IMG/VR virus record: IMGVR_UViG_3300049215_000771
Span: 62,001-126,000 of that record
DNA length: 64,000 nt
Reading direction: 5' to 3' (one strand)
Shown: piece by piece, positions 715 through 59,560 of the stretch
Layout: every line of letters starts with the position of its first letter
Numbering within the stretch: position 1 is the stretch's first letter
The notes under the pieces: model-generated
Told to the model about the DNA's origin: nothing
The model's input: the letters and a program-made list of their open reading frames with translations, nothing else
The model's database searches: none
Made by a program: the position numbers and the translations under genes

Positions 715-987
715 ATGACCACCAAAGTCACCCAAGCGGAATGCGAAGAGGCCAGGCCCGTTTGTGATCTGGTCTACACTGTCATCAAGGATCACCCGGA
801 AGGGATCAATTATCCCGACCTGATCCGTGAAATCAGGCTGCGGGGATGCACGATTTCTGATCTTTCGGAGCGTGTGCATTTTTCGCTGCACTGTATGGTT
901 TGTCACGGGGTTTGCGATAGGCTGGAAGCGCCGACCCTGGAGCGTATCTACCAACTTCCGGCACTGGAGAAGAAGTCCAATGAGTAA
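715..987 (+). CDS. hypothetical protein, possible winged-helix
   Basis: 90-aa ORF after the promoter; LVYTVIKDHPEGINYPDLIREI resembles a wHTH start. Confidence 0.55.
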   Translation: MTTKVTQAECEEARPVCDLVYTVIKDHPEGINYPDLIREIRLRGCTISDLSERVHFSLHCMVCHGVCDRLEAPTLERIYQLPALEKKSNE

Positions 988-1778
988 GCGCAAGAATCAG
1001 TGGTTCGAGGAACGCAAGGTCCAGCAGCCGGCGACTGTTTGTCTTTGAGGCAGCCAACACCCTTCTCGTCGAACTTCAGTTCGGCGAAGGCGGCACGGAC
1101 TCAAAGCTGTTCGTTGCTGACCTTCTACTCACCTACCAACGCTACGCCGCCATCAAAGGCTTCAAGACAGAACTCCTCTCCGAAGAAAATGGCAAAGCCA
1201 TGCTCAAGGTGATGGGGAAGAATGTCTGGACGGCCTTCAAGAATGAACCCGGCAAGCACGTTGTTCAGCGTGTGCCTCCGACCGAGCGTTCGGGGCGGTG
1301 GCAAACATCTGTGATTTCCGTCGCCGTCCTGCCGCTGCCCCCGGAAAACAAGCTGGTTCCACTCCAAGAAAAAGACTTGGAAATTACCACGCAAACCGGC
1401 AAGCAGAAGGCGGGCGGACAAAACGTCAACAAAGTCGCCAGCGCCGTCAGGATGAAGCATAAGCCTACGGGTCTGTCTGTATTCATCAACGGGCGGGACC
1501 AAGGCCAGAACAAGAAGGAAGCCCTGCATGTTCTGACGGCCAGGGTCAACCAGCTTCGTCTCGACAAGACCGCCTCCGATTACGACAATCTGAGGACGGG
1601 ACAGATGAAGGGAATCGGCGACAAACTCGGTGGTAGGGGCGACAAGATTCGTACCTACAACTTCATCAAGTCGAGGGTGGTGGATCACAGACTCGGCGTG
1701 AAGACCGGAAACATCAAGGAAGTGATGAAGGGAAACCTCACACTCCTGTTCGACAGTCAAGAAAAAGATGAAGAATAA
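980..1778 (+). CDS. prfA: class I peptide chain release factor, RF1-like, lacking domain 1; predicted +1 frameshift at 1043-1049 (about 265 aa)
   Basis: GGQ motif (AGGQNVNK), VQRVPPTE (PxT) and RTYNF..RVVDHR. RF homology (LVELQFGEGGTDSKLF) continues upstream of ATG 1200 to 1047 with no in-frame ATG/GTG/TTG. ATG 980 (GGAG upstream) opens a 22-codon frame ending CTT TGA. Confidence 0.85.
1043..1049 (+). other. candidate programmed +1 ribosomal frameshift site CUU-UGA
   Basis: CTT(1043-1045) TGA(1046-1048); the +1 codon GAG at 1047 is in the RF frame. Same core as the prfB shift site, but no Shine-Dalgarno 3 nt upstream. Confidence 0.6.
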
Positions 1779-1833: not shown

Positions 1834-2610
1834 TCAATTAGCCTTGAATCGGACATATTTGTGGGCTGTCCAGAAGTCGGAAGCGAGTTCCGGGTTCTCG
1901 ATGTAAGCGTAAGGCATTTCAAAGTAACCACTCATGCCCCAGCTTGCGCCCCAGGAATTGCGGACCTTGACCATCTTCGTGGCGTCGTTATAGCCAACTG
2001 CACATACAGCGTGACCACCAACAACCTGCTCGCCAGGCTTCGGCATCGGCATGATGCCAGTGTTGGCAACAGCGTCAGACTCGAAACTTTCGTATACGAC
2101 GAAACCGAAAATGAAAGGGTAGCCCTGCGCCAAGCACTGCTTCATGGCGGTCAAATTGCCATCGCCAATCTGCAAGCCCTTGTCAATGCTGTGCCAGTAA
2201 CCATCAGACCAAACAGGCTTAGATGGTTTTTCGGCGAACTTGTTGCCCTGGTCGGTGTACGGCCACAGGCTTTCGTGAGGAACGCCAAATCGAACAAGGG
2301 TGTTCATGGCATGAGCCAGGGTAGAACCATCATCCGATTGGGTGGTTCCATCCTGAAGGCGGTTCCACCAGTAGATTGCCAAACGAGATGGTACAAACTC
2401 GCCCAGCTTCAATTTCATCATGAGGAATTCAGCGAAACCAGCGGCAGAGTTGCCGGTGCAGGAACCAAGCTGCCCCTGGTCGTAGACAGCCGGACATTGC
2501 GGCGTCAGGTCAACTTCTGCGGGAAGGTTTGCTGCCTCGATTTCGGGCAGGAACTTGTGAGGGTGGTCAATGACCGGACCCTTCTTCCAACCATATGCGT
2601 ATTTTCCCAT
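1834..2610 (-). CDS. papain-family (C1A) cysteine peptidase
   Basis: QGQLGSCTGN, GGHAVCAVGY and VRNSWG catalytic motifs. Confidence 0.9.
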   Translation of the reverse strand: MGKYAYGWKKGPVIDHPHKFLPEIEAANLPAEVDLTPQCPAVYDQGQLGSCTGNSAAGFAEFLMMKLKLGEFVPSRLAIYWWNRLQDGTTQSDDGSTLAHAMNTLVRFGVPHESLWPYTDQGNKFAEKPSKPVWSDGYWHSIDKGLQIGDGNLTAMKQCLAQGYPFIFGFVVYESFESDAVANTGIMPMPKPGEQVVGGHAVCAVGYNDATKMVKVRNSWGASWGMSGYFEMPYAYIENPELASDFWTAHKYVRFKAN

Positions 2611-3258: not shown

Positions 3259-3735
3259 ATGCACGTTGGCGATTTTTTCCGGGGTGTGGCCCGGTTTATT
3301 GACGAGAAGTTTGTACACTACGCTGGCAGGCCGCTGGTACACTACAGGCTCCTGCCGGTCAGTGTCAAACATGATGCGGACGGGTTGTATTACCCTGAGT
3401 CCACCGAGAAGAAGTGGGAAAACAAACCTACCTTTCTGCGAGGTTTTTACGAGATTCCTGTCTCGACAGCGACCGGCCAGTTTGGTATTGATGCACCAGA
3501 CGAAATGCTTGTTGAGTTGGGATTTAACGACACTGTGAAGGCGCTCGGCAAAGTTCCTGGCATCGGCGATCTCTTCCTGGATTGCAACCATGACAAGTGG
3601 ATTGTCGTCCAAAGAAGCAGAAAAGATGACATGGTGCGAGGCCAAAACCGCCTGATTTTGACAGTTTGTCGGTTCCAGGAGTCTGTGACTACGGGAGGCA
3701 AGCAAGATGTCGAACATCATCAAGGAACTGTATGA
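3259..3735 (+). CDS. hypothetical protein, resembles T4 gp14-like neck/head-completion proteins
   Basis: ATG 3259 after GGAGG; LYYPE...QFGID..DE...GKVPGIGDLF pattern recalled from neck proteins. Confidence 0.4.
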   Translation: MHVGDFFRGVARFIDEKFVHYAGRPLVHYRLLPVSVKHDADGLYYPESTEKKWENKPTFLRGFYEIPVSTATGQFGIDAPDEMLVELGFNDTVKALGKVPGIGDLFLDCNHDKWIVVQRSRKDDMVRGQNRLILTVCRFQESVTTGGKQDVEHHQGTV

Positions 3736-4846
3736 CAAGGGACTGGCAAGCTGTGGCGGACATCACTGGATGCCCGACAACATGCACTACATCACGATGA
3801 TGGGTTCGGTCGCCTACGGCGTCAGCAACGACACATCCGACACCGACATTTACTCCTTCTGCATCCCGCCGAAGGACAACTTGTTCCCGCACCTTCGGGG
3901 CGAGATCGTCGGGTTCGGCGATGCCAAGCACGCCAACAACAGGTTCCGCAACCATCAGCAGCATCACGTCAAGGATGTTGGCGCTGAGAAGGAGTACGAT
4001 CTCAACGTCTACAACATCGTTGACTACTTCCAGTTGGTGATGGAAAACAACCCGAACATGATCGACAGTTTGTTCACTCCGCAGTTCTGTGTTCTGCACA
4101 GTACCCGGATCGGCCAGATGGTTCGTGAGGCTCGGAAAACTTTCCTTCACCGTGGCGCATGGCACGCCTTCAAGGGCTACAGCTATGCTCAACTGAAAAA
4201 GATGAGGCCGGGCGAGGAATTGGTCTGCCCGGAGTGTGAGCAGATCAGCAAGGGGTGGCATTCCAAGGACAACAAGTTCGAGGTTGCCTACGCCTTGATG
4301 CTCGACTTGTGGGCAGCCCTGGAGCGTGACCAGGGAACTTTGACGGACGAGGAACTGGACAAGTATTGCTTTTACTGTGCCAAGTCCAGGAAGGTTTCCA
4401 AGCTGGAGAAGCAGAAGGTCAACCGGCGTGTCGGGAAGCGAAAGGAATCTGTCGAGAAGTACGGATTCGACCCGAAATTCGCCTACCACGTTGTTCGGCT
4501 CCTGGGTGAAATCGAACAGATTCTCACCGAGGGTGACATCGACCTGCAACGGAACCGTGAGCAACTGAAGTCCATCCGGCGTGGCGAATGGACTCTCGAA
4601 CAAATCGAGAGTTACTTCGCCGACAAGGAACCCCAGCTTGAAACTCTCTACAACGAGAACAAGGCTGGGTTGCCGTGGGGTCCGAAGGACGGGGACTTGC
4701 AGAAGAACGTCAAGCAGCTTCTTTTCCATTGCCTGGAAGAACACTACGGTTCGCTTGACAAGTGTGTGGTCAATGTCGATGCCGCCGCAAACGCCCTTCG
4801 GGAGATCGAGGGAATCGTCGCTCGTTACAGAAAGGCGCTTGCATGA
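3707..4846 (+). CDS. Pol-beta superfamily nucleotidyltransferase (RlaP/PF10127-like)
   Basis: GSVAYGVSNDTSDTDI, NNPNMIDSLF, KFAYHVVRLL. Confidence 0.8.
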   Translation: MSNIIKELYDKGLASCGGHHWMPDNMHYITMMGSVAYGVSNDTSDTDIYSFCIPPKDNLFPHLRGEIVGFGDAKHANNRFRNHQQHHVKDVGAEKEYDLNVYNIVDYFQLVMENNPNMIDSLFTPQFCVLHSTRIGQMVREARKTFLHRGAWHAFKGYSYAQLKKMRPGEELVCPECEQISKGWHSKDNKFEVAYALMLDLWAALERDQGTLTDEELDKYCFYCAKSRKVSKLEKQKVNRRVGKRKESVEKYGFDPKFAYHVVRLLGEIEQILTEGDIDLQRNREQLKSIRRGEWTLEQIESYFADKEPQLETLYNENKAGLPWGPKDGDLQKNVKQLLFHCLEEHYGSLDKCVVNVDAAANALREIEGIVARYRKALA

Positions 4847-7878: not shown

Positions 7879-8323
7879 ATGCGCAGAATTTGGCGTACAT
7901 TTCCTTGGCGATGGCCTCGTACACGGCGTCAGTCGGCTTGCCGGCCTCGCTGTGGTAGTGAGTTTTCCCGCCAGCGTCGGCGCTGATGCTAAATTGCTTG
8001 TCGAAGACTTCCCACACCATTTGTTGGATTGTTTCGATGGTGCGGGGTTTCAGGTCGGCGAGCCGTCGAAGGATCATTCTTCCTTCATTCTCATATTCAT
8101 CTTTGGGAACTTCACAAGGCACGAGCCGGATGGGGTCGTGTTTGTAGAGAGTTTCCACCATCCAGTCGTAGTCGCTGCCGAACTGGAGGCGATCTTCCAT
8201 TTTCTCGATCTGGTGGAATTGTTGAAGTTCTTTACGCTCCTCGTCGCTGAGTTGCGACCCATAGGGCCGGGTGCGGAAGCGTTGTTTGAGTTCGGCAAAC
8301 TTTTCCTGTTGCTGTTTGTTCAT
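7877..8323 (-). CDS. hypothetical protein with DEYExE motif (DUF1871-like)
   Basis: MNKQQQEKF... after GGAG; DEYENEGRMIL. Confidence 0.55.
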   Translation of the reverse strand: MNKQQQEKFAELKQRFRTRPYGSQLSDEERKELQQFHQIEKMEDRLQFGSDYDWMVETLYKHDPIRLVPCEVPKDEYENEGRMILRRLADLKPRTIETIQQMVWEVFDKQFSISADAGGKTHYHSEAGKPTDAVYEAIAKEMYAKFCA

Positions 8324-8471
8324 GGCAGTCTCCGCATAACCCGCAATGCGGGCATTTGTCAATTGGTTCCCCGATCACCCGTAGGAACATTTCATCGTCC
8401 AGCAACATGATCGGGTAGTAATAGCACAGGTTGCAACACGGGCAGTATTCAACTTCGGCGAGGACGCTCAT
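8232..8471 (-). CDS. small Cys-rich protein (CxxC pairs)
   Basis: MSVLAEVEYCPCC...KCPHCGLC; overlaps the next gene by about 90 nt. Confidence 0.35.
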   Translation of the reverse strand: MSVLAEVEYCPCCNLCYYYPIMLLDDEMFLRVIGEPIDKCPHCGLCGDCHEQTATGKVCRTQTTLPHPALWVATQRRGA

Positions 8472-12580: not shown

Positions 12581-13882
12581 ATGTCTTCGGACAAAAACGA
12601 AGCCGGCGTGGAATTGCCGGATGGCATTACGCATCTGCATGGTGCCATGTATCTGGTCCGGTTCAACTTGCTGCAAGTGCCGGACCCGGACGCCAAGTGC
12701 GGCGACGAGGCCAACAAGGAGTACGAATTCCGCAACCCCAGGACGCTCACCGAGAAGGGCCAATCGGTCCTGTTCGATAAGCAGAAGTCGCAGGAGATGC
12801 GGGATTCCATCAGGGAGAAGACTCTGCTCACGCCTTTCATCTGCCGCTGGAAGAACAAGGCGGTCCAGATGGTTGGGGGCGAGCGGCGGCATCGGGCGGT
12901 GTCGTGGCTGATCCACAAGAAGGAGATGGTCAAAGACCCCCGCTCGCTCAAGTTCAACGACGACATGGAGCCGCAGTACGATTACAGTCCTGCGGACCAG
13001 GTGTACGAATTCGTCCTGTGTCAAATCTACCATGCCTCCAACGATCTGGATGCTTTGGCTCTCGCTTACACGGAGAATGACTGCCGTGTGAATCAGGGGC
13101 CGGGGCACGACATCGCTATGGTGTTGGAACTCCGCAAGTGCGGTGCTTCCGACGAGAAGATCATGGGGGTGATGTCGAAGGACGAGAAGTGGTTGCGGGA
13201 TACCGACAACCTCATCGCCGGCCTCGACGAGTCCACGTTGCGTGACGTGATCGAGGACACCATCGACCGTGAAGCCGCCCTCGAACTCCTTCCCATCAAG
13301 GAGAAGTTCAATGAGGAAGTCACGGCGAAGGTGAAGGAAGTCGCCAAAGACCTGGCCGACAAAGACTACAAGAAGCGATTCGAGCGTCTGACCAAGCGTC
13401 TGACCGAGGCCCGTGACGAACAGGAGATCGCCGAAGGCAATGTCGCTGATTCTTCTTTCCGCTCCGATGCCCAACAAGCTGAGGATCAGGAGAGCCTGAC
13501 GGAAGCTACGGCCAAGGTGCAACGCATCGCCAAAGACCGTGCCGGCGACAAGCCCAAGGTGACGCCTGGCAATGTCCGCAGTGGTCTGCGGGTCATTGTC
13601 GGCGAAGGTGAGTCCGAGGACGGCGAAGGGACTGCCGCTCCTTCTGGTGGTGCCCGCCCGCCGACTCAACCCAAGGCGTTGCGATACGCCAAGATCAAGG
13701 AAGCCTATATCGACGTTCTGGATGATCTGGTGAAGAAGGGCGGCAAACACCCGGAGTTCAAGGAATTCACCGCTTCGCCTGATGCCTGCAAGCTGGCGAA
13801 GAAGCTGATCTCGGCGCTGGCGACGGGAGACAGCGAGTGCATCGAGATCATTCGCCTTCACTACAAGGGGCTTTCTGGATGA
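12581..13882 (+). CDS. ParB/Srx-like N-terminal domain protein with coiled-coil C-terminus
   Basis: SIREKTLLTPFICR...QMVGGERRHRAV; GAGGAG RBS. Confidence 0.65.
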   Translation: MSSDKNEAGVELPDGITHLHGAMYLVRFNLLQVPDPDAKCGDEANKEYEFRNPRTLTEKGQSVLFDKQKSQEMRDSIREKTLLTPFICRWKNKAVQMVGGERRHRAVSWLIHKKEMVKDPRSLKFNDDMEPQYDYSPADQVYEFVLCQIYHASNDLDALALAYTENDCRVNQGPGHDIAMVLELRKCGASDEKIMGVMSKDEKWLRDTDNLIAGLDESTLRDVIEDTIDREAALELLPIKEKFNEEVTAKVKEVAKDLADKDYKKRFERLTKRLTEARDEQEIAEGNVADSSFRSDAQQAEDQESLTEATAKVQRIAKDRAGDKPKVTPGNVRSGLRVIVGEGESEDGEGTAAPSGGARPPTQPKALRYAKIKEAYIDVLDDLVKKGGKHPEFKEFTASPDACKLAKKLISALATGDSECIEIIRLHYKGLSG

Positions 13883-14360: not shown

Positions 14361-14990
14361 ATGAGAATCAATTTCTTCGGCGGGCCTGGCTGCGGCAAAA
14401 GTACCATTGCCGCCAAAATCTTCTCCGAACTGAAGATCAGGAACTACAGCATCGAAATCGTTCATGAGTACATCAAGAAATGGGCGTACATGAAGCGGGT
14501 GCCGCAATCGTTCGATCAGGTGTACATTTTTGGCCAGCAGTTGCACGCTGAAGACCTGGTGTGTCAAAGCGGCGTGCAACACCTTGTCACGGACTCGCCT
14601 CTCTACATGCAACCGTTCTACGCAAGAACCTACAATGTGCCGATCTGGAACGAGTTGATGATGATCGCCAAGCAGTACGAAAGGATTCACCCTTCTCTCA
14701 ACATCTTTCTGAATCGGGCTGTTACCTATCAGCAGAACGGGCGCTATGAGACGCCCGAAGTAGCGCTGGACCGTGATGCCAAAATGCGAGAATTTCTGGA
14801 ACAGCAATGTATCCCCTTTGTCGTTTTCAAACCGACAGATTATACTGACATTCTCAATTATGTTGATCTCTACCTTTCCTCGCCGGATACCAAGGCCGAG
14901 GATTTGGTGAAGAAAGAACTCAAGAAAAAGCCCAAGCGAAAACGTCGTGACCCTGAAGTTGTGGATTACACGGAGTACAGTTGCTCATGA
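14361..14990 (+). CDS. P-loop kinase, NadR/AAA_28-like
   Basis: INFFGGPGCGKST, VHEYIK, LVTDSPL. Confidence 0.75.
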   Translation: MRINFFGGPGCGKSTIAAKIFSELKIRNYSIEIVHEYIKKWAYMKRVPQSFDQVYIFGQQLHAEDLVCQSGVQHLVTDSPLYMQPFYARTYNVPIWNELMMIAKQYERIHPSLNIFLNRAVTYQQNGRYETPEVALDRDAKMREFLEQQCIPFVVFKPTDYTDILNYVDLYLSSPDTKAEDLVKKELKKKPKRKRRDPEVVDYTEYSCS

Positions 14991-15859
14991 GTTGCCAGAT
15001 CATTGACGGGAATGCCATCAGCGAAGCTATCCGGGCCGAACTTGCTGTTGAAGTTGCCAAGTTCAAAGAAGATTACAACGTCCAGCCCAGGCTGGCGGTC
15101 GTGTTGATTGGCGATGACCCGGCCAGCCAAATCTACGTCAAGAAGAAACGACAGGCGTGCGAGGAAGTCGGTATTGCCAGTTGTGTTGTTAGCCCACATT
15201 TGGGGCATATGCCTCAAAGAAGACTTGAAGAATCTATCCAGCATCTTGATGAGAACGAAGATATTCATGGTATCTTGGTGCAGCTTCCGCTGCCCAAGGA
15301 AATCAACGTGATGAGAATCTTCGACATGATTGACCCGCTCAAAGATGTGGATGTTTTTACGCCCTACAACGTCGGCTTGCTTGTGCAGGGAAGACCCAGG
15401 TACAAGCCTTGCACGCCTCACGCCGTCCAGCAACTTCTTGCCAGGTCTGGCATCCCGATTGCTGGACAGCATGTTGTGGTCATCAACCGCAGCAATGTCG
15501 TGGGCAAGCCCTTGTCCTCGATGCTGATTCAGGATTGCGATGATTTTGCCAACGCCACGGTCACAGTTTGCCACGACCGGACCCCGCCCGAAATGCTGGA
15601 GGAACTGACCAGGATGGCCGACATCGTTGTTGTGGCAGTTGGTCAGCCCGGCTTTCTCACCAGCAAGATGCTCAAACCTGGTGCAGTCGTTGTGGACGTT
15701 GGGATTACCAGAATCGACGACAAGGTGTACGGCGATGCCGATCCATCTTGCTATGAGGTTGCGAGCTATATTACCCCTGTGCCGGGCGGCGTCGGCCCCA
15801 TGACCGTTACCATGCTTTTGGAAAATACCCTCGCCGCCGCAAAACTGCTTCAGTTGTGA
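14987..15859 (+). CDS. folD: methylenetetrahydrofolate dehydrogenase/cyclohydrolase
   Basis: IHGILVQLPLP, KDVD, PCTPHA, GKPL, ITPVPGGVGPMTVTML. Confidence 0.95.
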   Translation: MSCQIIDGNAISEAIRAELAVEVAKFKEDYNVQPRLAVVLIGDDPASQIYVKKKRQACEEVGIASCVVSPHLGHMPQRRLEESIQHLDENEDIHGILVQLPLPKEINVMRIFDMIDPLKDVDVFTPYNVGLLVQGRPRYKPCTPHAVQQLLARSGIPIAGQHVVVINRSNVVGKPLSSMLIQDCDDFANATVTVCHDRTPPEMLEELTRMADIVVVAVGQPGFLTSKMLKPGAVVVDVGITRIDDKVYGDADPSCYEVASYITPVPGGVGPMTVTMLLENTLAAAKLLQL

Positions 15860-15888
15860 TTTACAACCAGACTAGATGCTGGTATTAT
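15860..15888 (+). promoter_or_regulatory. sigma70-type promoter
   Basis: TTTACA-17-TATTAT. Confidence 0.7.
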
Positions 15889-15895
15889 GGAAATC

Positions 15896-16930
15896 ATGGC
15901 ATCGTTTCTAACGAAAAAGGGGGCCACAGTGGACTTACGGGTGTTTGGTCTTGGGCAGTCACAGGAGTACGCCGACCAGGTGTGCCGGTCGATAGGGTTC
16001 AAGCGTACACCACACACTGAGGAGTTCCAGGATGACGGTGAGCCGTATGTCCTCTCGAAAGAAAACGTCCGGGGCTGTGATGTTTTTGTCGTTTCTTCTC
16101 TCTACAGTTGTGAGAAGGAACGGCTGGCCGACAAGTTCATCAAGTTGTTGTTTTTTGCTCGATCTCTCCGGGATGCCAGCGCTGGCAGATTGACGTTGGT
16201 GGTTCCCTACCTGGCCTACCAACGACAAGACCGGAAAACGGAATCGAGAGCGCCTGTTTACACCAAGTATGTCCCGGAGATGGTGGAAGGTTTGCTGGGG
16301 AAGGACGCTCGCATTTTGACGATGGATGCCCATAATCTTTCCGCCTTCCAGTCCGGCTTCCGCATGATGATCGACCATCTGGAGGCGAAGCCTTTGGTTG
16401 GCGACTGGTTCAGTAGAAACTACAAGGATTTCGACGAATTGGACGTTGACAACCTCGTGGCTTGTTCGCCGGACGAGGGTGGGGTGAAACGTACTGGCTA
16501 CTACCGTGACGAACTTTCGTCGAACCTGAAGGTTGATGTCGGCGTGGCGGCGGTTTACAAGGAGCGACGGGGCAAGAAGGTCCATTCACACGGCGTCATG
16601 GGTCACGTCAAGGGCAAGGACGTGATCTTGTTTGACGACTTGATCTCCAGCGGCAAAACGCTGATGGTCGCCACACAGGAGGTTGAGAAGGCCGGGGGCA
16701 GGGTTCGGGCGGCGGTTTGCACCCACGGTTTGTTTGTGGGCAACGCCAACGAGAACATTGGACACTTGATCGAGAAGGGGGTTAAGGTCGTGGTGACGGA
16801 CACGGTTGAACCGTTCCGGCTCGCCCCCGCTTTGAGGGAGAAGTTGGCGGTCATTCCAACTGCCAAACTGTTCGGGGAGGCCATTCGCTGTATTCACAAC
16901 GAGGAGTCCTTGAGCCGATTGTTGGGATAA
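15896..16930 (+). CDS. prs: ribose-phosphate pyrophosphokinase family protein
   Basis: FQDDGE, VPYLAYQRQDR, MDAH, SPDEGG, ILFDDLISSGKT. Confidence 0.9.
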   Translation: MASFLTKKGATVDLRVFGLGQSQEYADQVCRSIGFKRTPHTEEFQDDGEPYVLSKENVRGCDVFVVSSLYSCEKERLADKFIKLLFFARSLRDASAGRLTLVVPYLAYQRQDRKTESRAPVYTKYVPEMVEGLLGKDARILTMDAHNLSAFQSGFRMMIDHLEAKPLVGDWFSRNYKDFDELDVDNLVACSPDEGGVKRTGYYRDELSSNLKVDVGVAAVYKERRGKKVHSHGVMGHVKGKDVILFDDLISSGKTLMVATQEVEKAGGRVRAAVCTHGLFVGNANENIGHLIEKGVKVVVTDTVEPFRLAPALREKLAVIPTAKLFGEAIRCIHNEESLSRLLG

Positions 16931-18291: not shown

Positions 18292-18747
18292 GTGGGGGTC
18301 TACCTCGCTGACCGGGCGCTGGCGATGGTCGCCGAGGACTTCCACACGGGCATGGAGTTGCTGAAGATCGAGAAGGATCAACTCGCCGAGTACGTCATCG
18401 ACTTAGCGAAGCAACTCCGAGAGAAAGAACAACAGGAGAGCAAACCCAAACTCTCCATGCCGACGCCCAAGGTCTTGAAGAAGGTGACGGTTGTTGGTTT
18501 GTTGCCGGACCAGGCTCGCAACCTGGAAGAAAAACTGGCGGGCCTAGCCGAGTTGAACTTCATCGACAAGAACCGGCGCTCACCAACAGCCATTCCGCCA
18601 GTTCAAGACATTTTGGTGCTTGCAGCGGAATTCGTCAGCGTTCCGATGAAGATCGAAGCCAAGAAGCGAGCCGAGAACGGCACCCAGGTCATCTTGCACC
18701 GGGGCGGGGTTGGCCTGATGGCACAGAAACTCAAAGAAATCCTATGA
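18292..18747 (+). CDS. hypothetical protein
   Basis: 151-aa ORF containing VTVVGLLPDQ; start uncertain. Confidence 0.55.
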   Translation: MGVYLADRALAMVAEDFHTGMELLKIEKDQLAEYVIDLAKQLREKEQQESKPKLSMPTPKVLKKVTVVGLLPDQARNLEEKLAGLAELNFIDKNRRSPTAIPPVQDILVLAAEFVSVPMKIEAKKRAENGTQVILHRGGVGLMAQKLKEIL

Positions 18748-18836
18748 TTTTCAAGCCGGGTGATAAAGTCATGTGCATCAGCACCGACGCCCCCGCTCAT
18801 TTTCTGGCGTACCATTGACGAAGGATAGATACACCT

Positions 18837-18930
18837 GGAAGCGAATGCCGTCTGGTGTAGGCCGCAGTCTTCAAAACTGTTGTAGGGTGTGAACAACACT
18901 CTAGGAGGGTTCGATTCCCTTTCGCTTCCG
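18837..18930 (+). tRNA. selC: tRNA-Sec-like, anticodon UCA
   Basis: 8-bp acceptor GGAAGCGA/TCGCTTCC, 5-bp T stem with TTCGATT loop, TGGT D-loop, loop CTTCAAA (TCA at 18871-18873), 8-bp variable arm, G73; no encoded CCA. Confidence 0.85.
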
Positions 18931-19407
18931 TTCAACATACTCGGCGGCTTTTCTTAACAAGTCTGGATTGTCTTCAAATAAACCTAGAGCAGTGTTGCAA
19001 GTCCGACACAATAAACCACGAACATGCCCCTCAGCATGGCAGTGGTCAACAGCAAGTCGTTTGCCATCAGGATCGGGTTTTCCGCACAGGGCACACACGC
19101 CATTCTGTGATTCAAGTAACAAGTTGTAGTCATCAACTGATAAGCCAAATTCACGCCGAAGTTTGTTTTTCCAAACTACTTCGGCGTGATGTTTTTTGTC
19201 ACAGGTGGCATACCGTTTCTTGCAGTATGTTTTGTGCCATTCTTTGTTATTTTCGTAGCGGTCGCCGTATTTGTGACTGTTGTTTTTCCAGTAGTTTTGC
19301 TTGTACTTACGCTGGCAATCTCGACATTTGGTGTGCCGACGTTTTCCGCCATCACGGGGAGCGAATTCTTCAATCGGTTTGTCTATTTCGCAGGTGTTAC
19401 AAATCAT
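18901..19407 (-). CDS. endonuclease VII-like HNH (homing) endonuclease
   Basis: CNTC/CRDC Zn motifs; CALC...LAVDHCH..GHVRGLLCRTCNTALG. Confidence 0.85.
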   Translation of the reverse strand: MICNTCEIDKPIEEFAPRDGGKRRHTKCRDCQRKYKQNYWKNNSHKYGDRYENNKEWHKTYCKKRYATCDKKHHAEVVWKNKLRREFGLSVDDYNLLLESQNGVCALCGKPDPDGKRLAVDHCHAEGHVRGLLCRTCNTALGLFEDNPDLLRKAAEYVERKRKGIEPS

Positions 19408-27408: not shown

Positions 27409-27492
27409 GGGACCGTAGCTCAATGGTAGAGCAGGGGATTTGAATTGTGTCTCATAATCCCTTGGTTGCTGGTTCGAGTCCAGCCGGTCCCA
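27409..27492 (+). tRNA. tRNA(CAU), Ile2-like, with 12-nt insertion in the anticodon arm
   Basis: Acceptor GGGACCG/CGGTCCC, D stem GCTC/GAGC, T arm GCTGG-TTCGAGT-CCAGC; anticodon stem GGGGA/TCCCT encloses 19 nt instead of 7 (extra TTTGAATTGTGT, 27439-27450) before CTCATAA. Confidence 0.8.
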
Positions 27493-27503
27493 CAGGAGAT
27501 ACC

Positions 27504-40224: not shown

Positions 40225-40253
40225 TTTACAAGGCATGATTCTTGGGGTATGAT
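40225..40253 (+). promoter_or_regulatory. sigma70-type promoter
   Basis: TTTACA-17-TATGAT. Confidence 0.7.
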
Positions 40254-40259
40254 ACAGCC

Positions 40260-41489
40260 ATGTTCAATCTCTCCGAGGCGCTGGAGGCTCTGAAGGGCCA
40301 CGACGAGTTTGCAATCAAGGCTTATGACGGCCTGGTTACGCTTGACTACATTTTATGCTTCCCAGGCTCGTTCGATGCCGCAGAAGCCGAAATCGTGGCT
40401 CGTGGAGAGGCACAGGCTCACCGGGATGCAGAAATTCGCCGGAACTGTCGAGGGGTGACTTTCGACGAAAAGACTGGCGAGATCGTGTCTTTGCCGCTGC
40501 ACAAGTTTTTCAACATCGGCCAGACCGAGCAAACGCAGTTCCGCCACTTAACGTCCTGCAAGGCACGGATTTACGAGAAGATGGATGGTTCGATGATCCA
40601 CTTCTTCGTCCACCCGCACCGTCAGGAGTTGCTGGCGTCCACCTGCCGCTCGACGCAAACGCCCCAGGCGCAGGAGTCGCTGGGGCTGGCGAAGAAGAAC
40701 CAGCTTGTCTACGGCAAGATTCTCGCTATCATCGGTGAGGGTTGGACTCCGGTTTTCGAGTACGTCGCTGCACACAACCAGATCGTGGTGCAATATCCAC
40801 GTCCCCGGTTGGTGTATCTGATCTCTCGTCACCGGAAGACGGGCGAGTATAAGTTCCACGAAGGGTTCCCGGATACGGCAACGTATTTTGAGTTTCCCTT
40901 CCAGGACATCAACAACTACTTGGACCGCAAGGAATTCGAGGGCTACGTTTGCCACCTGGAATTCACGGAAGATGTTTCGTGCATCAAGGCGAAGAAGGGT
41001 GACAAGACGATTGTGAAGGCCAAGACGCCCTGGTACTTGGAGCGTCACCGGGCAGTGGATGCCCTGATGAGGCCGACCTACAAGTTGTACCAGGTCGTGT
41101 TCGATGGTGTCATGGACGACCTGTTGCCAACGGCTCCTGATCGGTTCAAGCCGAAGCTGGTTGGAATCTACGAAGAGGCGCAGCGTGATCTACTGAACGA
41201 GCAGCGCCGTGTTGAGAAGTTGTTCGATCTTTCGTTGGCGGCAGTGGAATCCGTTTGGAGCAGGACGTTCTCTCACGGAAAGCTGCCGGAACGCAAGATG
41301 GATCGGGTTCTCCGCAAGGCGTTCGTTGAGTACATCCAGCAGCACTACAAGTCGGATTTCTCTCTGCTGATGGCCCTGTATCTCGGCAATGACCCGTCTC
41401 CCACCATCAAGGACCGATTGATGGAAGGGTACAAGCTAAAGTACCCAAATCGGCTTTTTGCTGATTTGGAAGAAGAAGCTGTCGCATGA
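40260..41489 (+). CDS. T4 Rnl1-like RNA ligase
   Basis: CRGVTFD, LHKFFN, YEKMDGSMI, VFEY, EGYV, KAKTPWY. Confidence 0.88.
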   Translation: MFNLSEALEALKGHDEFAIKAYDGLVTLDYILCFPGSFDAAEAEIVARGEAQAHRDAEIRRNCRGVTFDEKTGEIVSLPLHKFFNIGQTEQTQFRHLTSCKARIYEKMDGSMIHFFVHPHRQELLASTCRSTQTPQAQESLGLAKKNQLVYGKILAIIGEGWTPVFEYVAAHNQIVVQYPRPRLVYLISRHRKTGEYKFHEGFPDTATYFEFPFQDINNYLDRKEFEGYVCHLEFTEDVSCIKAKKGDKTIVKAKTPWYLERHRAVDALMRPTYKLYQVVFDGVMDDLLPTAPDRFKPKLVGIYEEAQRDLLNEQRRVEKLFDLSLAAVESVWSRTFSHGKLPERKMDRVLRKAFVEYIQQHYKSDFSLLMALYLGNDPSPTIKDRLMEGYKLKYPNRLFADLEEEAVA

Positions 41490-41783: not shown

Positions 41784-42512
41784 ATGCCAATCCAGATTGG
41801 AAACATCGAGAAGAAAACCGACTCCCGCTGGCTCAACCTGTTTGAAGTCGATTATATCGGCATGACAGGCAAACCCGGCAAATGGCAGTTCGCCTCACGC
41901 AATCCCAACCCACAGCCCGGCCCCAATCCCATCACATCCAACGCCGTCATCATCGTTCCCCTCCTCAAAGATGGGCGCAAGCGGAAACTCGTCGTCATCA
42001 AGGAATTTCGCATTCCCCTGGGTGATTACGAGTATGCCGTCCCTGCCGGCCTGTTCGATCCGGGCGAGGAACTTGTCAAAACCGTCAAGCGGGAACTGAA
42101 GGAAGAAACGGGCTTGAAAGGGACGAAGATTCTCGTCACCAGCCCCGCCGTGGTTTCCAGCGCTGGCCTTTCCGATGAAGCCGTCAACTACGTTTTCGTC
42201 GAATGCACTGGCATCCCTGACAACAGTGGCAACGAGGGTACTGAAGACATCACCATCGAAGTTCTGGACATCGAAGGCGTGGCGAAACTCCGACGCTCCG
42301 GGGCCAAGATGTCTTCCAAGTTGTGGCCCATCCTCCTCATGTTCGAGGCGATGGGAAAAATCGCCATTCCCAGGAGCATCAGAGATGAAAATCGTAAGGC
42401 ATTACAACGAGGAAGAACTGAAGCAACTGCTGACCAAAGCGGTGGAGTTTCCGCAGAAGAACCGGCAGTTGAAGGTGAAGGAGATCAAGTTCCGAGTCAC
42501 GGAGCAGCGTGA
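41784..42512 (+). CDS. Nudix hydrolase, ADP-ribose pyrophosphatase-like
   Basis: KEFRIP...PAGLFDPGE.......RELKEETG; SSAGLSDE. Confidence 0.85.
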   Translation: MPIQIGNIEKKTDSRWLNLFEVDYIGMTGKPGKWQFASRNPNPQPGPNPITSNAVIIVPLLKDGRKRKLVVIKEFRIPLGDYEYAVPAGLFDPGEELVKTVKRELKEETGLKGTKILVTSPAVVSSAGLSDEAVNYVFVECTGIPDNSGNEGTEDITIEVLDIEGVAKLRRSGAKMSSKLWPILLMFEAMGKIAIPRSIRDENRKALQRGRTEATADQSGGVSAEEPAVEGEGDQVPSHGAA

Positions 42513-42582
42513 CGCCCACGACCGGCCTGGATTCGGGAACGTCGTCGAAGCGGAGATCGAAGTGGAGGAAGAAGAAAGATGA
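42385..42582 (+). CDS. small hypothetical protein
   Basis: AGGAG RBS; overlaps the Nudix tail; ATGA overlap with the next gene. Confidence 0.5.
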   Translation: MKIVRHYNEEELKQLLTKAVEFPQKNRQLKVKEIKFRVTEQRDAHDRPGFGNVVEAEIEVEEEER

Positions 42583-43580
42583 ACCTAAAAGACAAAGTAC
42601 GAGGAACCTTCCTGGGCCTCGCCATTGGCGATGCCCTGGGGAAAGCTACGGAATCGCTGTCGTTCAACACCATCATGGAGAAGTTCGGCAGGATTACCGA
42701 CTACATCAGCAATCCCCACCACAAGTATTTCGATGGCGCTCCCGTTGGCTCCTGGACTGACGACACTCAGCTTTCTCTTGCTGTGGCTCGTGGCATTGCC
42801 CACAAAGGCGAATTCGACCTGGATGCCATTGCCGAGGAACATTGTGTTGAGTTCATGAAAACTGTGGCTGGTTGGGGCAACACTACCAGAGAAGCCATCG
42901 CCAAGATCGTGGACGGTGGGCACTGGTCCCAGGCCAGCCTCACAGACCAACCCAACCGAGGCGTCGGCAATGGCGTGGCAATGAAGGTTGCCCCTGTTGG
43001 TTGCTACATGGCCTTGACCAACCCCGAATGCAACAACCCGCAGTGGGGCGAGGATGTGAAAAAGCTGATGAAGCTGGCGACTATGACGCACTTCACCAGC
43101 ATGGCGATTACTTCGGGATTCGCCCAAACCTTCGCCGTGTTCAAGTGCATGATGTCGGACCCCGAAAACTTCGATGTCAAGTCCTTCATCCGAACCATCA
43201 ACGGCGCAGGCATGATGGGGCGGCGGTACTTGTTCAAGACCATTACCCAGGATGACATTGCCAACAGGTTCGGCCTGTTGGAAAAATACGACGAGTACCC
43301 GCCCGAACGCATCATCGCCGAGTTGAAGGGTAGCTGCTACGTCTACGAGTCGCTGCCGTTCACCTTCATGTTCTTCGTCCGTAACCCACACAGTATTGAA
43401 ACGCTGTACGATGTGGTGACGGCGGGCGGGGACACGGACACCAATGGCTCCATGCTCGGCGCTCTCCTGGGCGCTCTGCACGGCACAGACATCTTTCCCG
43501 AACATCTGGTTGACGGCCTCCGTGAACGTGAGATGGTCATGGAAGTCGCCGACAGGATGTACGACAAGTTGAAGGGCTAA
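42579..43580 (+). CDS. ADP-ribosylglycohydrolase (DraG/ARH family)
   Basis: GLAIGDALG, WTDDTQ, GNGVAMK.AP, GGDTDT. Confidence 0.92.
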   Translation: MNLKDKVRGTFLGLAIGDALGKATESLSFNTIMEKFGRITDYISNPHHKYFDGAPVGSWTDDTQLSLAVARGIAHKGEFDLDAIAEEHCVEFMKTVAGWGNTTREAIAKIVDGGHWSQASLTDQPNRGVGNGVAMKVAPVGCYMALTNPECNNPQWGEDVKKLMKLATMTHFTSMAITSGFAQTFAVFKCMMSDPENFDVKSFIRTINGAGMMGRRYLFKTITQDDIANRFGLLEKYDEYPPERIIAELKGSCYVYESLPFTFMFFVRNPHSIETLYDVVTAGGDTDTNGSMLGALLGALHGTDIFPEHLVDGLREREMVMEVADRMYDKLKG

Positions 43581-46529: not shown

Positions 46530-47021
46530 ATGGCAAGGTATGGTAATATCTTTTTCCTTCCTGGCATTGTTAGGGTATCGTTTGAAGACCCAGCACCAGG
46601 CTTCTTAGAGGACAAGTTGACGAATGGTGAGGGCGTAACCATCACCACTGTCAACCAGCCCTGGGAAGATGGTGGTCAAGTGTTGGTTGTTTCTATGGCC
46701 CCTGGAGCGGGGTCTGGAAATGTTCTTACTTTGAGAACGCCTGGGGCGCAGGTTACTCCTGACGTTTCCACTGTTTTCATTGATGCGTCACAAGGGCCGG
46801 TCGAAGTGATCTTCCCTGAAGCTGCCGCATTCCTTGGTTCGTTTACCCTGGTTTGTTTGGATAACAGCAATCCCATCACGTTGCAATCTTCGTCGGGTTC
46901 GACGATTTTTGCCCCGGAGAACTTTGAGTTCCACACTGCTGGGGATGCTTTCATTTTCCAAAGCGACAGGGTTGGTGTCTGGTATGCAATATCCAGGTAC
47001 ACCGCAAACTGGTACGCATAA
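46530..47021 (+). CDS. beta-rich protein, possibly virion-associated
   Basis: GGAGGT RBS, AT-richer codons; VFIDASQGPVEVIFP...NPITL repeat-like module seen in fibre proteins. Confidence 0.4.
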   Translation: MARYGNIFFLPGIVRVSFEDPAPGFLEDKLTNGEGVTITTVNQPWEDGGQVLVVSMAPGAGSGNVLTLRTPGAQVTPDVSTVFIDASQGPVEVIFPEAAAFLGSFTLVCLDNSNPITLQSSSGSTIFAPENFEFHTAGDAFIFQSDRVGVWYAISRYTANWYA

Positions 47022-47663
47022 ATGAAGGAATATCCGAAGATTCTTGGTCCCTACGATGCAGCCCACGGACAACCGTGCATCGCATTCTACAAACTGGACG
47101 GCTCGAATCTTCGGTTTGAATGGAACCCGAAGTCGGGCTGGTACAAATTTGGAACCCGCCGACAATTGTTCCATCCCACTGATCCGGTCTATGGGTCGGC
47201 TGTGGAAATCTTTCTCCGAAAGTACGGCGATGGCTTAATCAAAGTCATACGAGAAAACTCCGCATATCGGAAGGTTGATGGCTTGATCGCTTATGCCGAG
47301 TTCTTCGGCCCGCATAGTTTCGCCGGCAAGCACGATGCCGAGTTTTTGGGTGTTGAATCCAATGACCCCAAAGATGTGGTGTTGTTCGACATCAATATCA
47401 ACAAGAAGGGTTTTGTCTCTCCAGAAAAATTTGTTGAGCATTTTGGGCATTTGCATATTCCCGAAGTGGTCTACCGTGGCCCATTTGACCGGGATTTCAC
47501 CGAGTCAATTCGCAACAATACCCTGGGCGTTCCACTCGTCGAGGGCGTCGTCGCTAAGGGCGGCGAAGGGCATAAACTCTGGATGAGGAAGGTCAAAACC
47601 CTCGCATATCTCAAAGAACTCAAAGAACGCCTGGGAACTGGCTGGGAGCAGTATTGGGAATGA
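47022..47663 (+). CDS. RNA ligase-like covalent nucleotidyltransferase
   Basis: FYKLDGSN, AYAEFFG, VLFDI, EGVVAK, KVKT. Confidence 0.75.
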   Translation: MKEYPKILGPYDAAHGQPCIAFYKLDGSNLRFEWNPKSGWYKFGTRRQLFHPTDPVYGSAVEIFLRKYGDGLIKVIRENSAYRKVDGLIAYAEFFGPHSFAGKHDAEFLGVESNDPKDVVLFDININKKGFVSPEKFVEHFGHLHIPEVVYRGPFDRDFTESIRNNTLGVPLVEGVVAKGGEGHKLWMRKVKTLAYLKELKERLGTGWEQYWE

Positions 47664-47664
47664 C

Positions 47665-47693
47665 TTTACAACCAGCCTCCGGGGTGGTACAAT
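47665..47693 (+). promoter_or_regulatory. sigma70-type promoter
   Basis: TTTACA-17-TACAAT. Confidence 0.7.
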
Positions 47694-47723
47694 CGGCCCT
47701 AGAATGGCGTTTTCGAGGTTCCC

Positions 47724-54883: not shown

Positions 54884-55579
54884 ATGCAAGTCTGGCTTGA
54901 ACCTATTGAGATGGTCGGGGCATCAGTTCCGATCCCCGCCGTTCTCACACGAATTCAACTGGCGTGTTGTGATGCCGGGTTTCAAAGTCAGAAACTCAAC
55001 CAAATTCTCAATGAAGCCTGCATGGTCATGCCCGGCAATCTCGAACAAGCCAAGGGCAACTACGATCCTAGCGTTTACGCTATGGAGGTTATACAAACCG
55101 AGCGTATTCGAGTGGGATTTTTCGACAGGCTCCGTGATGCTCTCGATGAAGTTGCCCAGGCCGCTGGGGACACGATTGATTGGTGTCTGTTATTCATGGA
55201 TTACGACATCCATTTCGCTCGGCATGACGCCTTCGTGAACGGCCTGAAATGTTTTCCGTACTTGGAATGCTATCTTGTTGTCGCCGACGCCGACTCGCCA
55301 TTGATGAACAACTGGAGGAATCCACGGAAATTATCGGTACAAGTTATCACAGAGGCCACACTGCAAACAATGGCCCCCTCGATGGGTTTCCAGAATCCGA
55401 TTGGAATTCAAGGCATATTTGCGCAACAACCATTGCCGGCCCCAGCAGCGAGTGGTAATATGCCCGCTGTCTCGCCTTCTGGTTGGCTGAATGACTATGA
55501 AGACCCTGAAGAAGTGGAAGAAGTGGTCAAGCCACAACCAAAGCCCAAGACAAAATATCGGAGCATCGACGACCCGTGA
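54884..55579 (+). CDS. hypothetical protein with C-terminal YRSIDD motif
   Basis: Ends ...PKTKYRSIDDP; motif at 55556-55573. Confidence 0.65.
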   Translation: MQVWLEPIEMVGASVPIPAVLTRIQLACCDAGFQSQKLNQILNEACMVMPGNLEQAKGNYDPSVYAMEVIQTERIRVGFFDRLRDALDEVAQAAGDTIDWCLLFMDYDIHFARHDAFVNGLKCFPYLECYLVVADADSPLMNNWRNPRKLSVQVITEATLQTMAPSMGFQNPIGIQGIFAQQPLPAPAASGNMPAVSPSGWLNDYEDPEEVEEVVKPQPKPKTKYRSIDDP

Positions 55580-55589
55580 GGATTATGTC

Positions 55590-59392: not shown

Positions 59393-59463
59393 GCCCCGTT
59401 GGTACATTGGCTGTGCCGTGGCCTCTAAAGCCACAGAAGTCGGTTCGATTCCGGCACGGGGTA
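59393..59463 (+). tRNA. amber suppressor tRNA, anticodon CUA (copy 1)
   Basis: GCCCCGT/ACGGGGT acceptor, GTGGC-CTCTAAA-GCCAC (CTA at 59425-59427), GTCGG-TTCGATT-CCGGC, A73. Confidence 0.85.
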
Positions 59464-59466
59464 CAA

Positions 59467-59539: not shown

Positions 59540-59560
59540 CTGCATATCATAGGGAGGTTC

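What the first reader, a model, noticed from the sequence alone, without database searches (positions are those of the whole stretch)
18837..18930. Phage-encoded selenocysteine tRNA (UCA)
Seen: an 8/5 acceptor/T-stem fold, extended D stem with UGGU loop, UCA anticodon, long variable arm and G73. Known: these features define tRNA-Sec, which needs SelA/SelB/SelD and SECIS elements. None of those genes, and no clear selenoprotein, is in this window. Inference: it may supplement host Sec decoding, titrate SelB, replace a cleaved host tRNA, or affect UGA handling together with the UGA-gated release factor.
Basis: partly seen in the sequence, partly recalled or inferred. Interest (0 to 1): 0.7.

Follow-up and report, generated by a model that had tools for sequence, protein, structure and literature searches.

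The report
Selenocysteine tRNA gene in huge phage
A 533-kb phage from a moss microbiome carries a well-formed bacterial-type selenocysteine tRNA gene but none of the enzymes or target genes it needs, so it can only work through its host: a rare, already reported kind of phage tRNA whose role is untested.

Summary
Window 18837-18930(+) is called tRNA-Sec(UCA) by ARAGORN. It scores 76.5 bits on Rfam RF01852 (cut-off 47) and 85.1 bits on a bacterial 8/5 model I built. The phage's own tRNA-Ser score 31-36 and no class II tRNA of related phages exceeds 46. Every helix is canonical except two inner D-stem pairs.

The window lies in a 532,729-bp phage with 56 tRNA genes, EF-Tu, an RF1-type release factor, synthetase-like genes, a CCA-adding-enzyme-like gene and RNA-repair genes. 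The genome has no selA, selB or selD. It uses the standard code, and my screens found no selenoprotein candidate.

The tRNA and an adjacent endonuclease VII gene are a ~620-bp insertion missing from the closest relative. None of 40 related records has a tRNA-Sec. No sampled sequence is more than 67% identical to it.

Most likely it is a host-dependent spare tRNA-Sec within the phage's translation kit. A neutral passenger of a homing endonuclease is the main rival. The proposed link to the UGA-gated release factor is not supported: relatives use TAA, TAG or TGA at that gate. Expression of the tRNA was not shown. A predicted tRNA-SeC was already reported in Bacillus phages, so this is a new member of a known kind.

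The parts
18837..18930 (+). tRNA-Sec gene of 94 nt. Acceptor 18837-18844 pairs with 18922-18929. D arm 18847-18862, with loop UGGU. Anticodon arm 18864-18880, with UCA at 18871-18873. Variable arm 18883-18903. T arm 18905-18921. Discriminator G at 18930. No CCA is encoded.
   Evidence: ARAGORN. Rfam RF01852, 76.5 bits. Own bacterial 8/5 model R1, 85.1 bits, with only two non-canonical pairs, both inside the D stem. An identical copy lies in a contig of a second sample set.
18901..19407 (-). Endonuclease VII-type (homing-endonuclease-like) gene of 168 aa. Its last 9 codons and its stop codon are the reverse complement of the tRNA's variable-arm 3' strand, T arm and acceptor 3' strand.
   Evidence: Pfam PF02945, 87.6 bits. 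PHROG endonuclease VII families. Single copy in the genome. A 47%-identical homologue sits at the same intergenic site in relative L082, with no tRNA there.
18709..19328 (.). Segment of about 620 bp (tRNA-Sec plus most of the endonuclease gene) that has no counterpart in the closest relative. The borders are approximate.
   Evidence: tblastx synteny: window 18708 matches L003 8099 and window 19329 matches L003 8125. A DNA-level alignment was too diverged to fix the junctions. No tRNA lies at this site in L003, L004, L012, L016 or L082.
18292..18747 (+). Upstream ORF of 151 aa with no family match, on the same strand as the tRNA. A possible co-transcription unit.
   Evidence: No Pfam or PHROG match. 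No sigma-70-like promoter or terminator lies between it and the tRNA. A metatranscriptome contig covers 18559-18791, running 44 nt past the ORF's stop and ending 46 nt before the tRNA.

Best explanation
This is a genuine bacterial-type (8/5) selenocysteine tRNA gene carried by a ~533-kb phage as one piece of a large translation kit.

Shown:
- The gene has every sequence and structure mark of tRNA-Sec except two weak inner D-stem pairs.
- It sits, with an endonuclease VII gene that overlaps its 3' end on the other strand, in a ~620-bp insertion that the closest relative lacks.
- The phage encodes no SelA, SelB or SelD.
- The phage shows no recoded UGA and no detectable selenoprotein gene.

Inferred:
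- If active, the transcript is probably read through from the upstream ORF and trimmed by RNase P and RNase Z.
- It gets its CCA from the host or the phage CCA-adding enzyme.
- Host SerRS charges it with serine. It shares G1-G5/C68-C72, G73 and the long variable arm with the phage's four tRNA-Ser.
- Host SelA and SelD convert it to Sec-tRNA, and host SelB delivers it to SECIS-bearing host mRNAs.
- Its most likely use is as a spare supply of tRNA-Sec. That would keep host selenoenzymes being made during a long infection in which host tRNAs are depleted or cleaved.
- It probably arrived and persists as cargo beside a homing endonuclease.
For: Identity.

Phage context:
- 56 tRNA genes covering most amino acids.
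- EF-Tu and an RF1-type factor.
- ThrRS and a SerRS-like core.
- A CCA-adding-enzyme-like ORF.
- A T4 Rnl1-type RNA ligase and RlaP RNA-repair genes in the window.
- A terminase.

Assimilation into the phage: like all 56 phage tRNA genes it encodes no CCA, whereas 131 of 150 sampled tRNA-Sec genes do. Its GC is 0.53 against means of 0.60-0.65.

Structure kept despite divergence: it is at most 67% identical to any of about 190 sampled tRNA-Sec genes. Yet all acceptor, anticodon, T and variable-arm pairs are intact, and it matches the conserved (upper-case) consensus positions of the model.

Host plausibility:
- The phage comes from moss metagenomes.
- Its exact acceptor stem recurs mainly in Acidobacteriota (about 21 of 36 hits).
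- Its EF-Tu, FolD and ClpX are each closest to a Pirellulaceae genome among five phyla tried.
- 109 of 151 sampled Planctomycetota genomes hold a tRNA-Sec.

The phage is active: metatranscriptome contigs cover neighbouring genes.

Precedent: a viral contig carries a tRNA-Sec inside a 16-tRNA array dotted with HNH and LAGLIDADG endonuclease genes. A predicted tRNA-SeC was reported in Basilisk-like Bacillus phages (PMC6145125).
Against: - No transcript or mature tRNA was seen. Logan contigs of ordinary RNA-seq would rarely hold a 94-nt tRNA, so this is weak evidence.
- No promoter-like site lies upstream.
- The D stem, which by established knowledge SelA reads, has two non-canonical inner pairs. 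That is an outlier among 134 tRNA-Sec sequences.
- The gene occurs in this phage only: 0 of 40 related records have one. The only other copy seen is identical, so there is no evidence of selection from variation.
- The host is unknown, so its Sec machinery is assumed.
- tRNA-Sec is needed in very small amounts, so a benefit from an extra copy is not obvious.
Confidence: 0.45

Rival explanations
1. Neutral or decaying passenger. The tRNA-Sec gene was picked up by illegitimate recombination at a homing-endonuclease hotspot, does nothing useful for the phage and is starting to degrade.
For: - The insertion is absent from the closest relative, and the tRNA is absent from all 40 related records.
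- The same intergenic site holds an endonuclease VII homologue without a tRNA in relative L082.
- The endonuclease ORF runs into the tRNA (sequence).
- Two D-stem mismatches make it an outlier.
- There is no promoter-like site.
- No Sec machinery or selenoprotein gene is in the phage.
Against: - Apart from the two D-stem pairs, all 26 other helix pairs are intact and it matches the model's conserved consensus positions, although it is at most 67% identical to any sampled tRNA-Sec.
- It scores as high as chromosomal tRNA-Sec genes.
- It lacks an encoded CCA and has low GC, like the phage's own tRNAs. This argues against a fresh capture from the bacteria sampled.
- A recent capture from an unsampled donor cannot be excluded.
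Confidence: 0.3
2. SECIS-independent UGA reader. The tRNA is serylated (and perhaps converted) and carried to ordinary UGA codons by EF-Tu, possibly the phage's own divergent EF-Tu. It would then act as a general or timed UGA suppressor.
For: - The phage encodes a divergent EF-Tu, 59-65% identical to bacterial EF-Tu of five phyla, and a SerRS-like catalytic core.
- It also carries three CUA-anticodon tRNAs and a release-factor gene gated by a stop codon. This shows that the phage tampers with stop-codon handling.
Against: - TGA is the commonest stop of the phage's long ORFs (65 of 147), with no sign of read-through or tandem back-up stops.
- No conserved in-frame TGA appears in genes shared with the closest relative.
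- Every read-through candidate is a gene junction or an antisense shadow.
- The tRNA keeps the 13-bp acceptor/T helix typical of SelB clients and the G.U first T-stem pair. By established knowledge that pair is part of the E. coli anti-EF-Tu determinant.
- The SerRS-like protein lacks the N-terminal arm that binds the long variable arm.
- The release-factor gate codon varies among relatives.
Confidence: 0.07
3. Decoy or sponge. The RNA is made to bind and hold a host factor (SelB, SelA, SerRS or a tRNA-cleaving defence nuclease) rather than to decode.
For: - The phage carries RNA-repair genes (Rnl1-type ligase, RlaP), which suggests that its hosts attack tRNAs.
- The weakened D stem could fit a tRNA that binds its partners but is poorly converted.
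Against: No known defence targets tRNA-Sec (own knowledge). No benefit from lowering host Sec decoding is evident. Nothing in the sequence separates a decoy from a working tRNA.
Confidence: 0.05
4. Integration-site remnant. The tRNA copy marks an attachment site for integration into a host selC gene, as with elements that insert at tRNA-Sec.
For: IMG/VR classes the record as 'provirus'. Most tRNA-Sec genes found in viral contigs are enterobacterial-type selC copies, and several lie at or near contig ends, as expected of prophage flanks.
Against: - The gene is full length and lies 80 kb inside a 533-kb genome.
- No integrase is among its neighbours.
- It shares no long identical stretch with any sampled bacterial tRNA-Sec.
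Confidence: 0.02

Closest known systems
Bacterial selC tRNA-Sec (E. coli type, 8/5 fold; Rfam RF01852)
   Same: UCA anticodon in a CUUCAAA loop. 8-bp acceptor plus 5-bp T stem. 4-nt D loop (UGGU). Long variable arm. G73. G.U as the first T-stem pair. Model scores are in the range of chromosomal genes.
   Different: It is encoded by a phage that has no selA, selB, selD or selenoprotein gene. Two inner D-stem pairs are non-canonical. No CCA is encoded. GC is lower. It is at most 67% identical to any sampled bacterial gene.
Predicted tRNA-SeC of Basilisk-like Bacillus phages (PMC6145125)
   Same: A tRNA-Sec call in a phage genome that has no Sec machinery. Function unknown.
   Different: By that paper those phages carry only a few tRNA genes; that they are small siphoviruses is my own knowledge. 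Here the gene sits in a 533-kb phage with 56 tRNAs and many translation genes. No sequence similarity to any GenBank phage was found apart from one 76% partial hit in an unannotated 4.8-kb record.
Suppressor tRNAs and release factors of stop-codon-recoded phages (bioRxiv 10.1101/2021.08.26.457843; PMC13037316)
   Same: A phage-encoded tRNA that reads a stop codon, alongside a phage release factor and, here, three CUA tRNAs.
   Different: Those phages have in-frame recoded stops and ordinary suppressor tRNAs. This genome shows the standard code, and this tRNA has the Sec architecture.
tRNA regions of T4-like phages with homing endonucleases such as SegB (own knowledge, not checked here)
   Same: A tRNA gene directly beside a free-standing endonuclease gene in a variable region. 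The same pattern appears in viral contig L168.
   Different: Here the endonuclease is of the endonuclease VII type, and the ORF overlaps the tRNA on the opposite strand. Homing was not tested.
allo-tRNAs, the tRNA-Sec-like tRNAs with 8/4 or 9/3 folds (own knowledge, not checked here)
   Same: A long variable arm, serine identity elements and an unusually long acceptor helix.
   Different: This tRNA has the canonical 8/5 arrangement and the UCA anticodon, so it is not an allo-tRNA.

Membership tests
Bacterial tRNA-Sec (selC) | Anticodon UCA in a 7-nt loop | tested here: met
   Loop CUUCAAA, with UCA at 18871-18873.
Bacterial tRNA-Sec (selC) | 13-bp acceptor/T helix in the 8/5 arrangement | tested here: met
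   8 Watson-Crick acceptor pairs and 5 T-stem pairs (G.U plus 4 Watson-Crick). No non-canonical pair is flagged there by the 8/5 model R1.
Bacterial tRNA-Sec (selC) | 6-bp D stem closing a 4-nt D loop | tested here: inconclusive
   The loop is UGGU, the commonest type (60 of 134). Only 4 of 6 stem positions pair canonically, with G.A and U.U inside. Among 134 sequences, 96 have 6/6 and 34 have 5/6.
Bacterial tRNA-Sec (selC) | Long variable arm and G73 (serine identity set) | tested here: met
   8-bp variable stem with a 5-nt loop, and G at 18930. G1-G5/C68-C72 and G73 are shared with the phage's four tRNA-Ser.
Bacterial tRNA-Sec (selC) | Score above the curated threshold of the family model and above other class II tRNAs | tested here: met
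   RF01852 gives 76.5 bits against a cut-off of 47. Class II tRNAs of 40 related phage records reach at most 45.9 bits. R1 gives 85.1 bits against 31-46 for Ser, Leu and Tyr tRNAs.
Bacterial tRNA-Sec (selC) | Works with SelA, SelB, SelD and SECIS-bearing mRNAs in the same cell | not testable with these tools
   None of these is in the phage genome and no selenoprotein candidate was found. They would have to be the host's, and the host is unknown. Candidate host phyla commonly hold tRNA-Sec.
Bacterial tRNA-Sec (selC) | Serylation by SerRS, conversion to Sec, rejection by EF-Tu, binding by SelB | not testable with these tools
   Biochemical properties. Only the sequence prerequisites could be read.
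Phage suppressor tRNA of a stop-codon-recoded genome | In-frame copies of the matching stop codon (TGA) in the phage's own genes | tested here: not met
   No conserved in-frame TGA in genes shared with the closest relative. Coding-potential screens gave only gene junctions and antisense shadows. TGA ends 65 of 147 long ORFs.
tRNA gene as prophage attachment site (selC-type integration) | tRNA or tRNA fragment at the element's end, next to an integrase, identical to the host tRNA over the core | tested here: not met
   The gene is internal, at 80.8 kb of 532.7 kb. Its neighbours are an endonuclease VII gene, a glyoxalase-family gene, a glycosyltransferase and ClpX. It is at most 67% identical to sampled bacterial tRNA-Sec genes.

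The most novel reading that the evidence does not exclude
The tRNA-Sec works without the host's SelB/SECIS route. It would be charged with serine (or converted to Sec) and delivered by the phage's own divergent EF-Tu to chosen UGA codons. That would make it part of a phage-run system of stop-codon control, together with the three CUA tRNAs and the stop-gated RF1-type release factor.
Probability: 0.06. Interest if true: 0.85.

Novelty: new member of a known kind. Interest (0 to 1): 0.45.

Why it matters
If the tRNA is active, a virus of bacteria supplies the adaptor for the 21st amino acid while relying on the host for everything else. That would show that huge phages protect even the rarest branch of host translation. 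It would also give a simple test system: complementation of a selC mutant. The test would show how far a tRNA-Sec with a weakened D stem is still accepted by SerRS, SelA and SelB.

If it is inactive, it is a clear example of a tRNA gene hitch-hiking beside a homing endonuclease.

Either way, it warns annotators that a tRNA-Sec call in a phage does not imply selenoproteins or recoding.

Tried and rejected
- Alternative genetic code. Removing TGA as a stop lengthens ORFs, but that is expected at 53% GC. Stop usage, downstream frames and comparison with the closest relative show the standard code.
- Phage selenoprotein genes. Four screens were run: in-frame stops flanked by coding potential, long start-less ORF heads after TGA, Cys near TGA, and tblastx against a 340-kb relative. 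They gave only gene junctions with RBS+ATG, or antisense shadows of longer ORFs. One such shadow lies over an acidic-repeat gene at G000 294-299 kb. The thioredoxin gene has no internal stop and there is no glutaredoxin. Sensitivity is limited for short or orphan genes.
- Tracing the donor. Exact and gapped pattern scans of viral, genome and metagenome collections found no match above 67% identity. A 151-genome scan of Planctomycetota and a blastn of GenBank phages found none either.
- Origin from the phage's own tRNA-Ser. It is only 65-66% identical to them, although the T arm is 16/17 identical to tRNA-Ser(UGA). Inconclusive.
- Host identification. EF-Tu, FolD and ClpX are each closest to a Pirellulaceae genome among five phyla, but at only 53-65% identity. 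This is a lead, not a finding.
- Expression. Contigs of six RNA runs do not cover the tRNA. This is not evidence of absence.
- Exact insertion junctions. The DNA alignment with L003 is too diverged.
- Link with the release-factor gate. Rejected.
- MFE folding alone does not return the cloverleaf, though the z-score is -3.75. This is usual for tRNAs, so I relied on covariance models instead.

Full report
**The observation**

The stretch 18837-18930(+) is called tRNA-SeC (anticodon tca) by ARAGORN. It matches Rfam RF01852 end to end at 76.5 bits, against a gathering score of 47. Chromosomal tRNA-Sec genes from diverse bacteria scored 64-82 bits in the same test.

I confirmed an 8/5 structure on them: 94.5% of cells are paired and 20 of 24 pairs show compensatory changes. 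I then built covariance model R1 from that alignment.
- The phage tRNA scores 85.1 bits.
- tRNA-Sec genes not used for training score 74.6-87.6.
- The phage's own four tRNA-Ser score 31-36.
- The best class II tRNA of related phages scores 46.

Only two pairs are non-canonical, both inside the D stem (G.A and U.U). That leaves 4 of 6 pairs, whereas 130 of 134 unique tRNA-Sec sequences have 5 or 6. No CCA is encoded.

**The genome around it**

The window is bases 62,001-126,000 of a single 532,729-bp virus record with 52.7% GC. It is a phage: it has a large terminase gene and many phage-family proteins.

It carries a large translation kit:
- 56 tRNA genes, mostly in arrays spanning the record's ends. 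The Sec gene lies apart from them.
- A divergent EF-Tu.
- An RF1-type release factor.
- ThrRS, a SerRS-like catalytic core without the tRNA-binding arm, and HisRS- and GlyRS-like fragments.
- A CCA-adding-enzyme-like ORF.
- Within the window, a T4 Rnl1-type RNA ligase and an RlaP RNA-repair protein.

There is no selA or selD. The only match to selB is EF-Tu.

**Genetic code and selenoproteins**

TGA is the most frequent stop of long ORFs (65 of 147), and nothing continues in frame behind it. A tblastx comparison with the closest relative (G001, 340 kb, covering 37% of this genome) found no conserved in-frame TGA or TAG in a true coding frame.

Three coding-potential screens returned only gene junctions followed by RBS+ATG, or antisense shadows of longer ORFs. 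The single thioredoxin gene has no internal stop. The phage therefore uses the standard code and shows no selenoprotein gene, within the limits of these screens.

**How it got there**

Relatives were found through the neighbouring ClpX-like gene. None of 40 related records reaches the tRNA-Sec threshold; seven of them are at least 90% complete.

Gene order around the tRNA is conserved in the closest relative, L003. However, window ~18709-19328 (the tRNA plus an endonuclease VII gene) corresponds to about 25 bp there.

The endonuclease ORF (18901-19407, minus strand) ends inside the tRNA. Its last nine codons are antisense to the tRNA's 3' third. Another relative, L082, has a homologous endonuclease at the same intergenic site and no tRNA. 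The site is thus an insertion hotspot, and the tRNA is most simply cargo that arrived beside a mobile endonuclease.

**Where it came from**

I ran pattern scans of genome, viral and metagenome collections, an R1 scan of 151 Planctomycetota genomes, and a blastn of GenBank phages. No sequence found is more than 67% identical to it.

Its exact acceptor stem recurs mainly in Acidobacteriota, about 21 of 36 hits. Unlike 131 of 150 sampled tRNA-Sec genes, it has no encoded CCA. This matches all 56 tRNA genes of the phage, and its GC is lower than theirs. These points argue for long residence in phage genomes, or for an unsampled donor.

**Habitat, host and expression**

The DNA occurs in moss metagenomes. 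A second sample set holds a contig with the identical tRNA. Metatranscriptome contigs cover neighbouring genes, and one runs to 46 nt before the tRNA. None covers the tRNA itself, which is uninformative for so small an RNA. No promoter-like site lies upstream, so co-transcription with the upstream ORFs is likely.

The host is unknown. Three phage proteins are each closest to a Pirellulaceae genome among five phyla tried, at 53-65% identity. In addition, 109 of 151 sampled Planctomycetota genomes have a tRNA-Sec. A Sec-using host is therefore plausible but not shown.

**Mechanism**

The best-supported reading is a host-dependent spare tRNA-Sec inside a phage translation and RNA-repair kit. It would be processed, CCA-tailed, serylated, converted and delivered entirely by host factors, to host SECIS-bearing mRNAs. 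I give this about 0.45.

The main rival is a neutral passenger of the endonuclease, at about 0.3. For it speak the weak D stem, the single occurrence and the lack of a promoter. Against it speak the otherwise perfect helices, despite deep divergence from every sampled tRNA-Sec.

A SECIS-independent UGA reader, a decoy and an attachment-site remnant are each unlikely, for the reasons given under the rival explanations.

**The release factor**

The gene at window 980-1778 starts with a 22-codon leader that ends in TGT CTT TGA. It continues in the +1 frame as an RF1-type factor with a PPT motif and GGQ, and it lacks domain 1.

The shift site is conserved in relatives, but the gate codon varies: TAA in G001 and G029, TAG in G021 and G014, TGA in G026. 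None of those records has a tRNA-Sec. The proposed joint action with the tRNA-Sec is therefore not supported. The gated RF1-type gene is worth a study of its own.

**What is known**

A predicted tRNA-SeC was reported in Basilisk-like Bacillus phages as the first such case, with unknown significance (PMC6145125). I found a further viral contig with a tRNA-Sec inside a 16-tRNA array dotted with HNH and LAGLIDADG endonuclease genes. Work on recoded phages describes suppressor tRNAs and release factors, but not Sec-type tRNAs.

This case is a new member of a known kind. Its interest is moderate and would rise if activity or a SelB-independent use were shown.

Noticed in passing
window 980-1778 (+); relatives L356-L361: RF1-type release factor gene (PPT motif, GGQ, no domain 1) read through a prfB-like +1 shift. 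A 22-codon leader ends in TGT CTT TGA G, then the RF frame follows. The shift site is conserved in related huge phages, but with TAA, TAG or TGA as the gate codon. A UGA gate on an RF1-type factor cannot be self-regulating unless the factor's specificity is broader.
   Followed up: partly
window 59393-59464 and 59467-59540 (+); G000 491736-491826 (-): Three CUA-anticodon (amber-reading) tRNA genes, two of them in tandem, in a genome that shows no in-frame TAG in genes shared with its closest relative. Their purpose in a standard-code phage that also encodes an RF1-type factor is unexplained.
   Followed up: partly
window 27409-27493 (+); G000 13184-13278 and 55504-55586: tRNA-Phe(GAA) with a 14-nt insertion in the anticodon loop, probably an intron. 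ARAGORN also calls two long tRNA-like genes with four-base 'anticodons', probably intron-bearing as well.
   Followed up: no
G000 46690-47694 (+) = L345:1285-2289: SerRS-like protein of 334 aa that matches only the catalytic core of serS (profile positions 151-397 of 418). It lacks the N-terminal arm that binds the long variable arm of tRNA-Ser and tRNA-Sec and has about 90 extra C-terminal residues. It is preceded by a cpYpsA SLOG-family gene.
   Followed up: partly
G000 ~489871-491052 (-) = L002:1246-2427: Phage-encoded EF-Tu of 393 aa, only 59-65% identical to EF-Tu of five bacterial phyla and closest to a Pirellulaceae genome. ThrRS and HisRS- and GlyRS-like fragments are also present, and a CCA-adding-enzyme-like ORF lies at G000 ~257 kb.
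   Followed up: partly
window 40242-41489 (+) and 3707-4846 (+): T4 Rnl1-type RNA ligase and an RlaP-family RNA-repair nucleotidyltransferase. These suggest that the phage repairs cleaved tRNAs.
   Followed up: no
L168 (IMG/VR contig of 11,083 bp), tRNA-Sec at 8313-8411: A second phage-type tRNA array: 16 tRNAs with HNH, LAGLIDADG and endonuclease I-like genes and an R2K ATP-grasp gene. It includes a tRNA-Sec scoring 64.3 bits on Rfam and 74.6 bits on R1. Its tRNA-Sec is only 59% identical to this one, and a tblastx of the contig against this genome found no shared protein-coding similarity.
   Followed up: partly
G000 ~294,200-299,400: A very long, highly repetitive gene on the + strand, with acidic Asp/Pro/Ser/His-rich repeats. 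Its antisense frame looks strongly coding and carries regularly spaced in-frame TGAs, which is a trap for recoding screens.
   Followed up: no
window 1834-2610 (-), 41784-42512 (+), 42579-43580 (+), 14981-16930 (+): Papain-family cysteine protease, NUDIX hydrolase, ADP-ribosylglycohydrolase, FolD and ribose-phosphate pyrophosphokinase genes in the phage.
   Followed up: no
151 Planctomycetota genomes (G042, G046-G195): 109 of 151 sampled Planctomycetota genomes hold a tRNA-Sec at E <= 1e-8 with model R1. Selenocysteine use appears widespread in that phylum.
   Followed up: no
G000 58694, 172903 and 179811; after tRNAs at G000 20500 and 482177; L356 upstream of the RF gene: A recurring TTTACA(AAT) motif just after stop codons and tRNA ends. 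In G001 it is followed 17 nt later by TAGAAT, so it may be the phage's sigma-70-like promoter. It is not present upstream of the tRNA-Sec.
   Followed up: no
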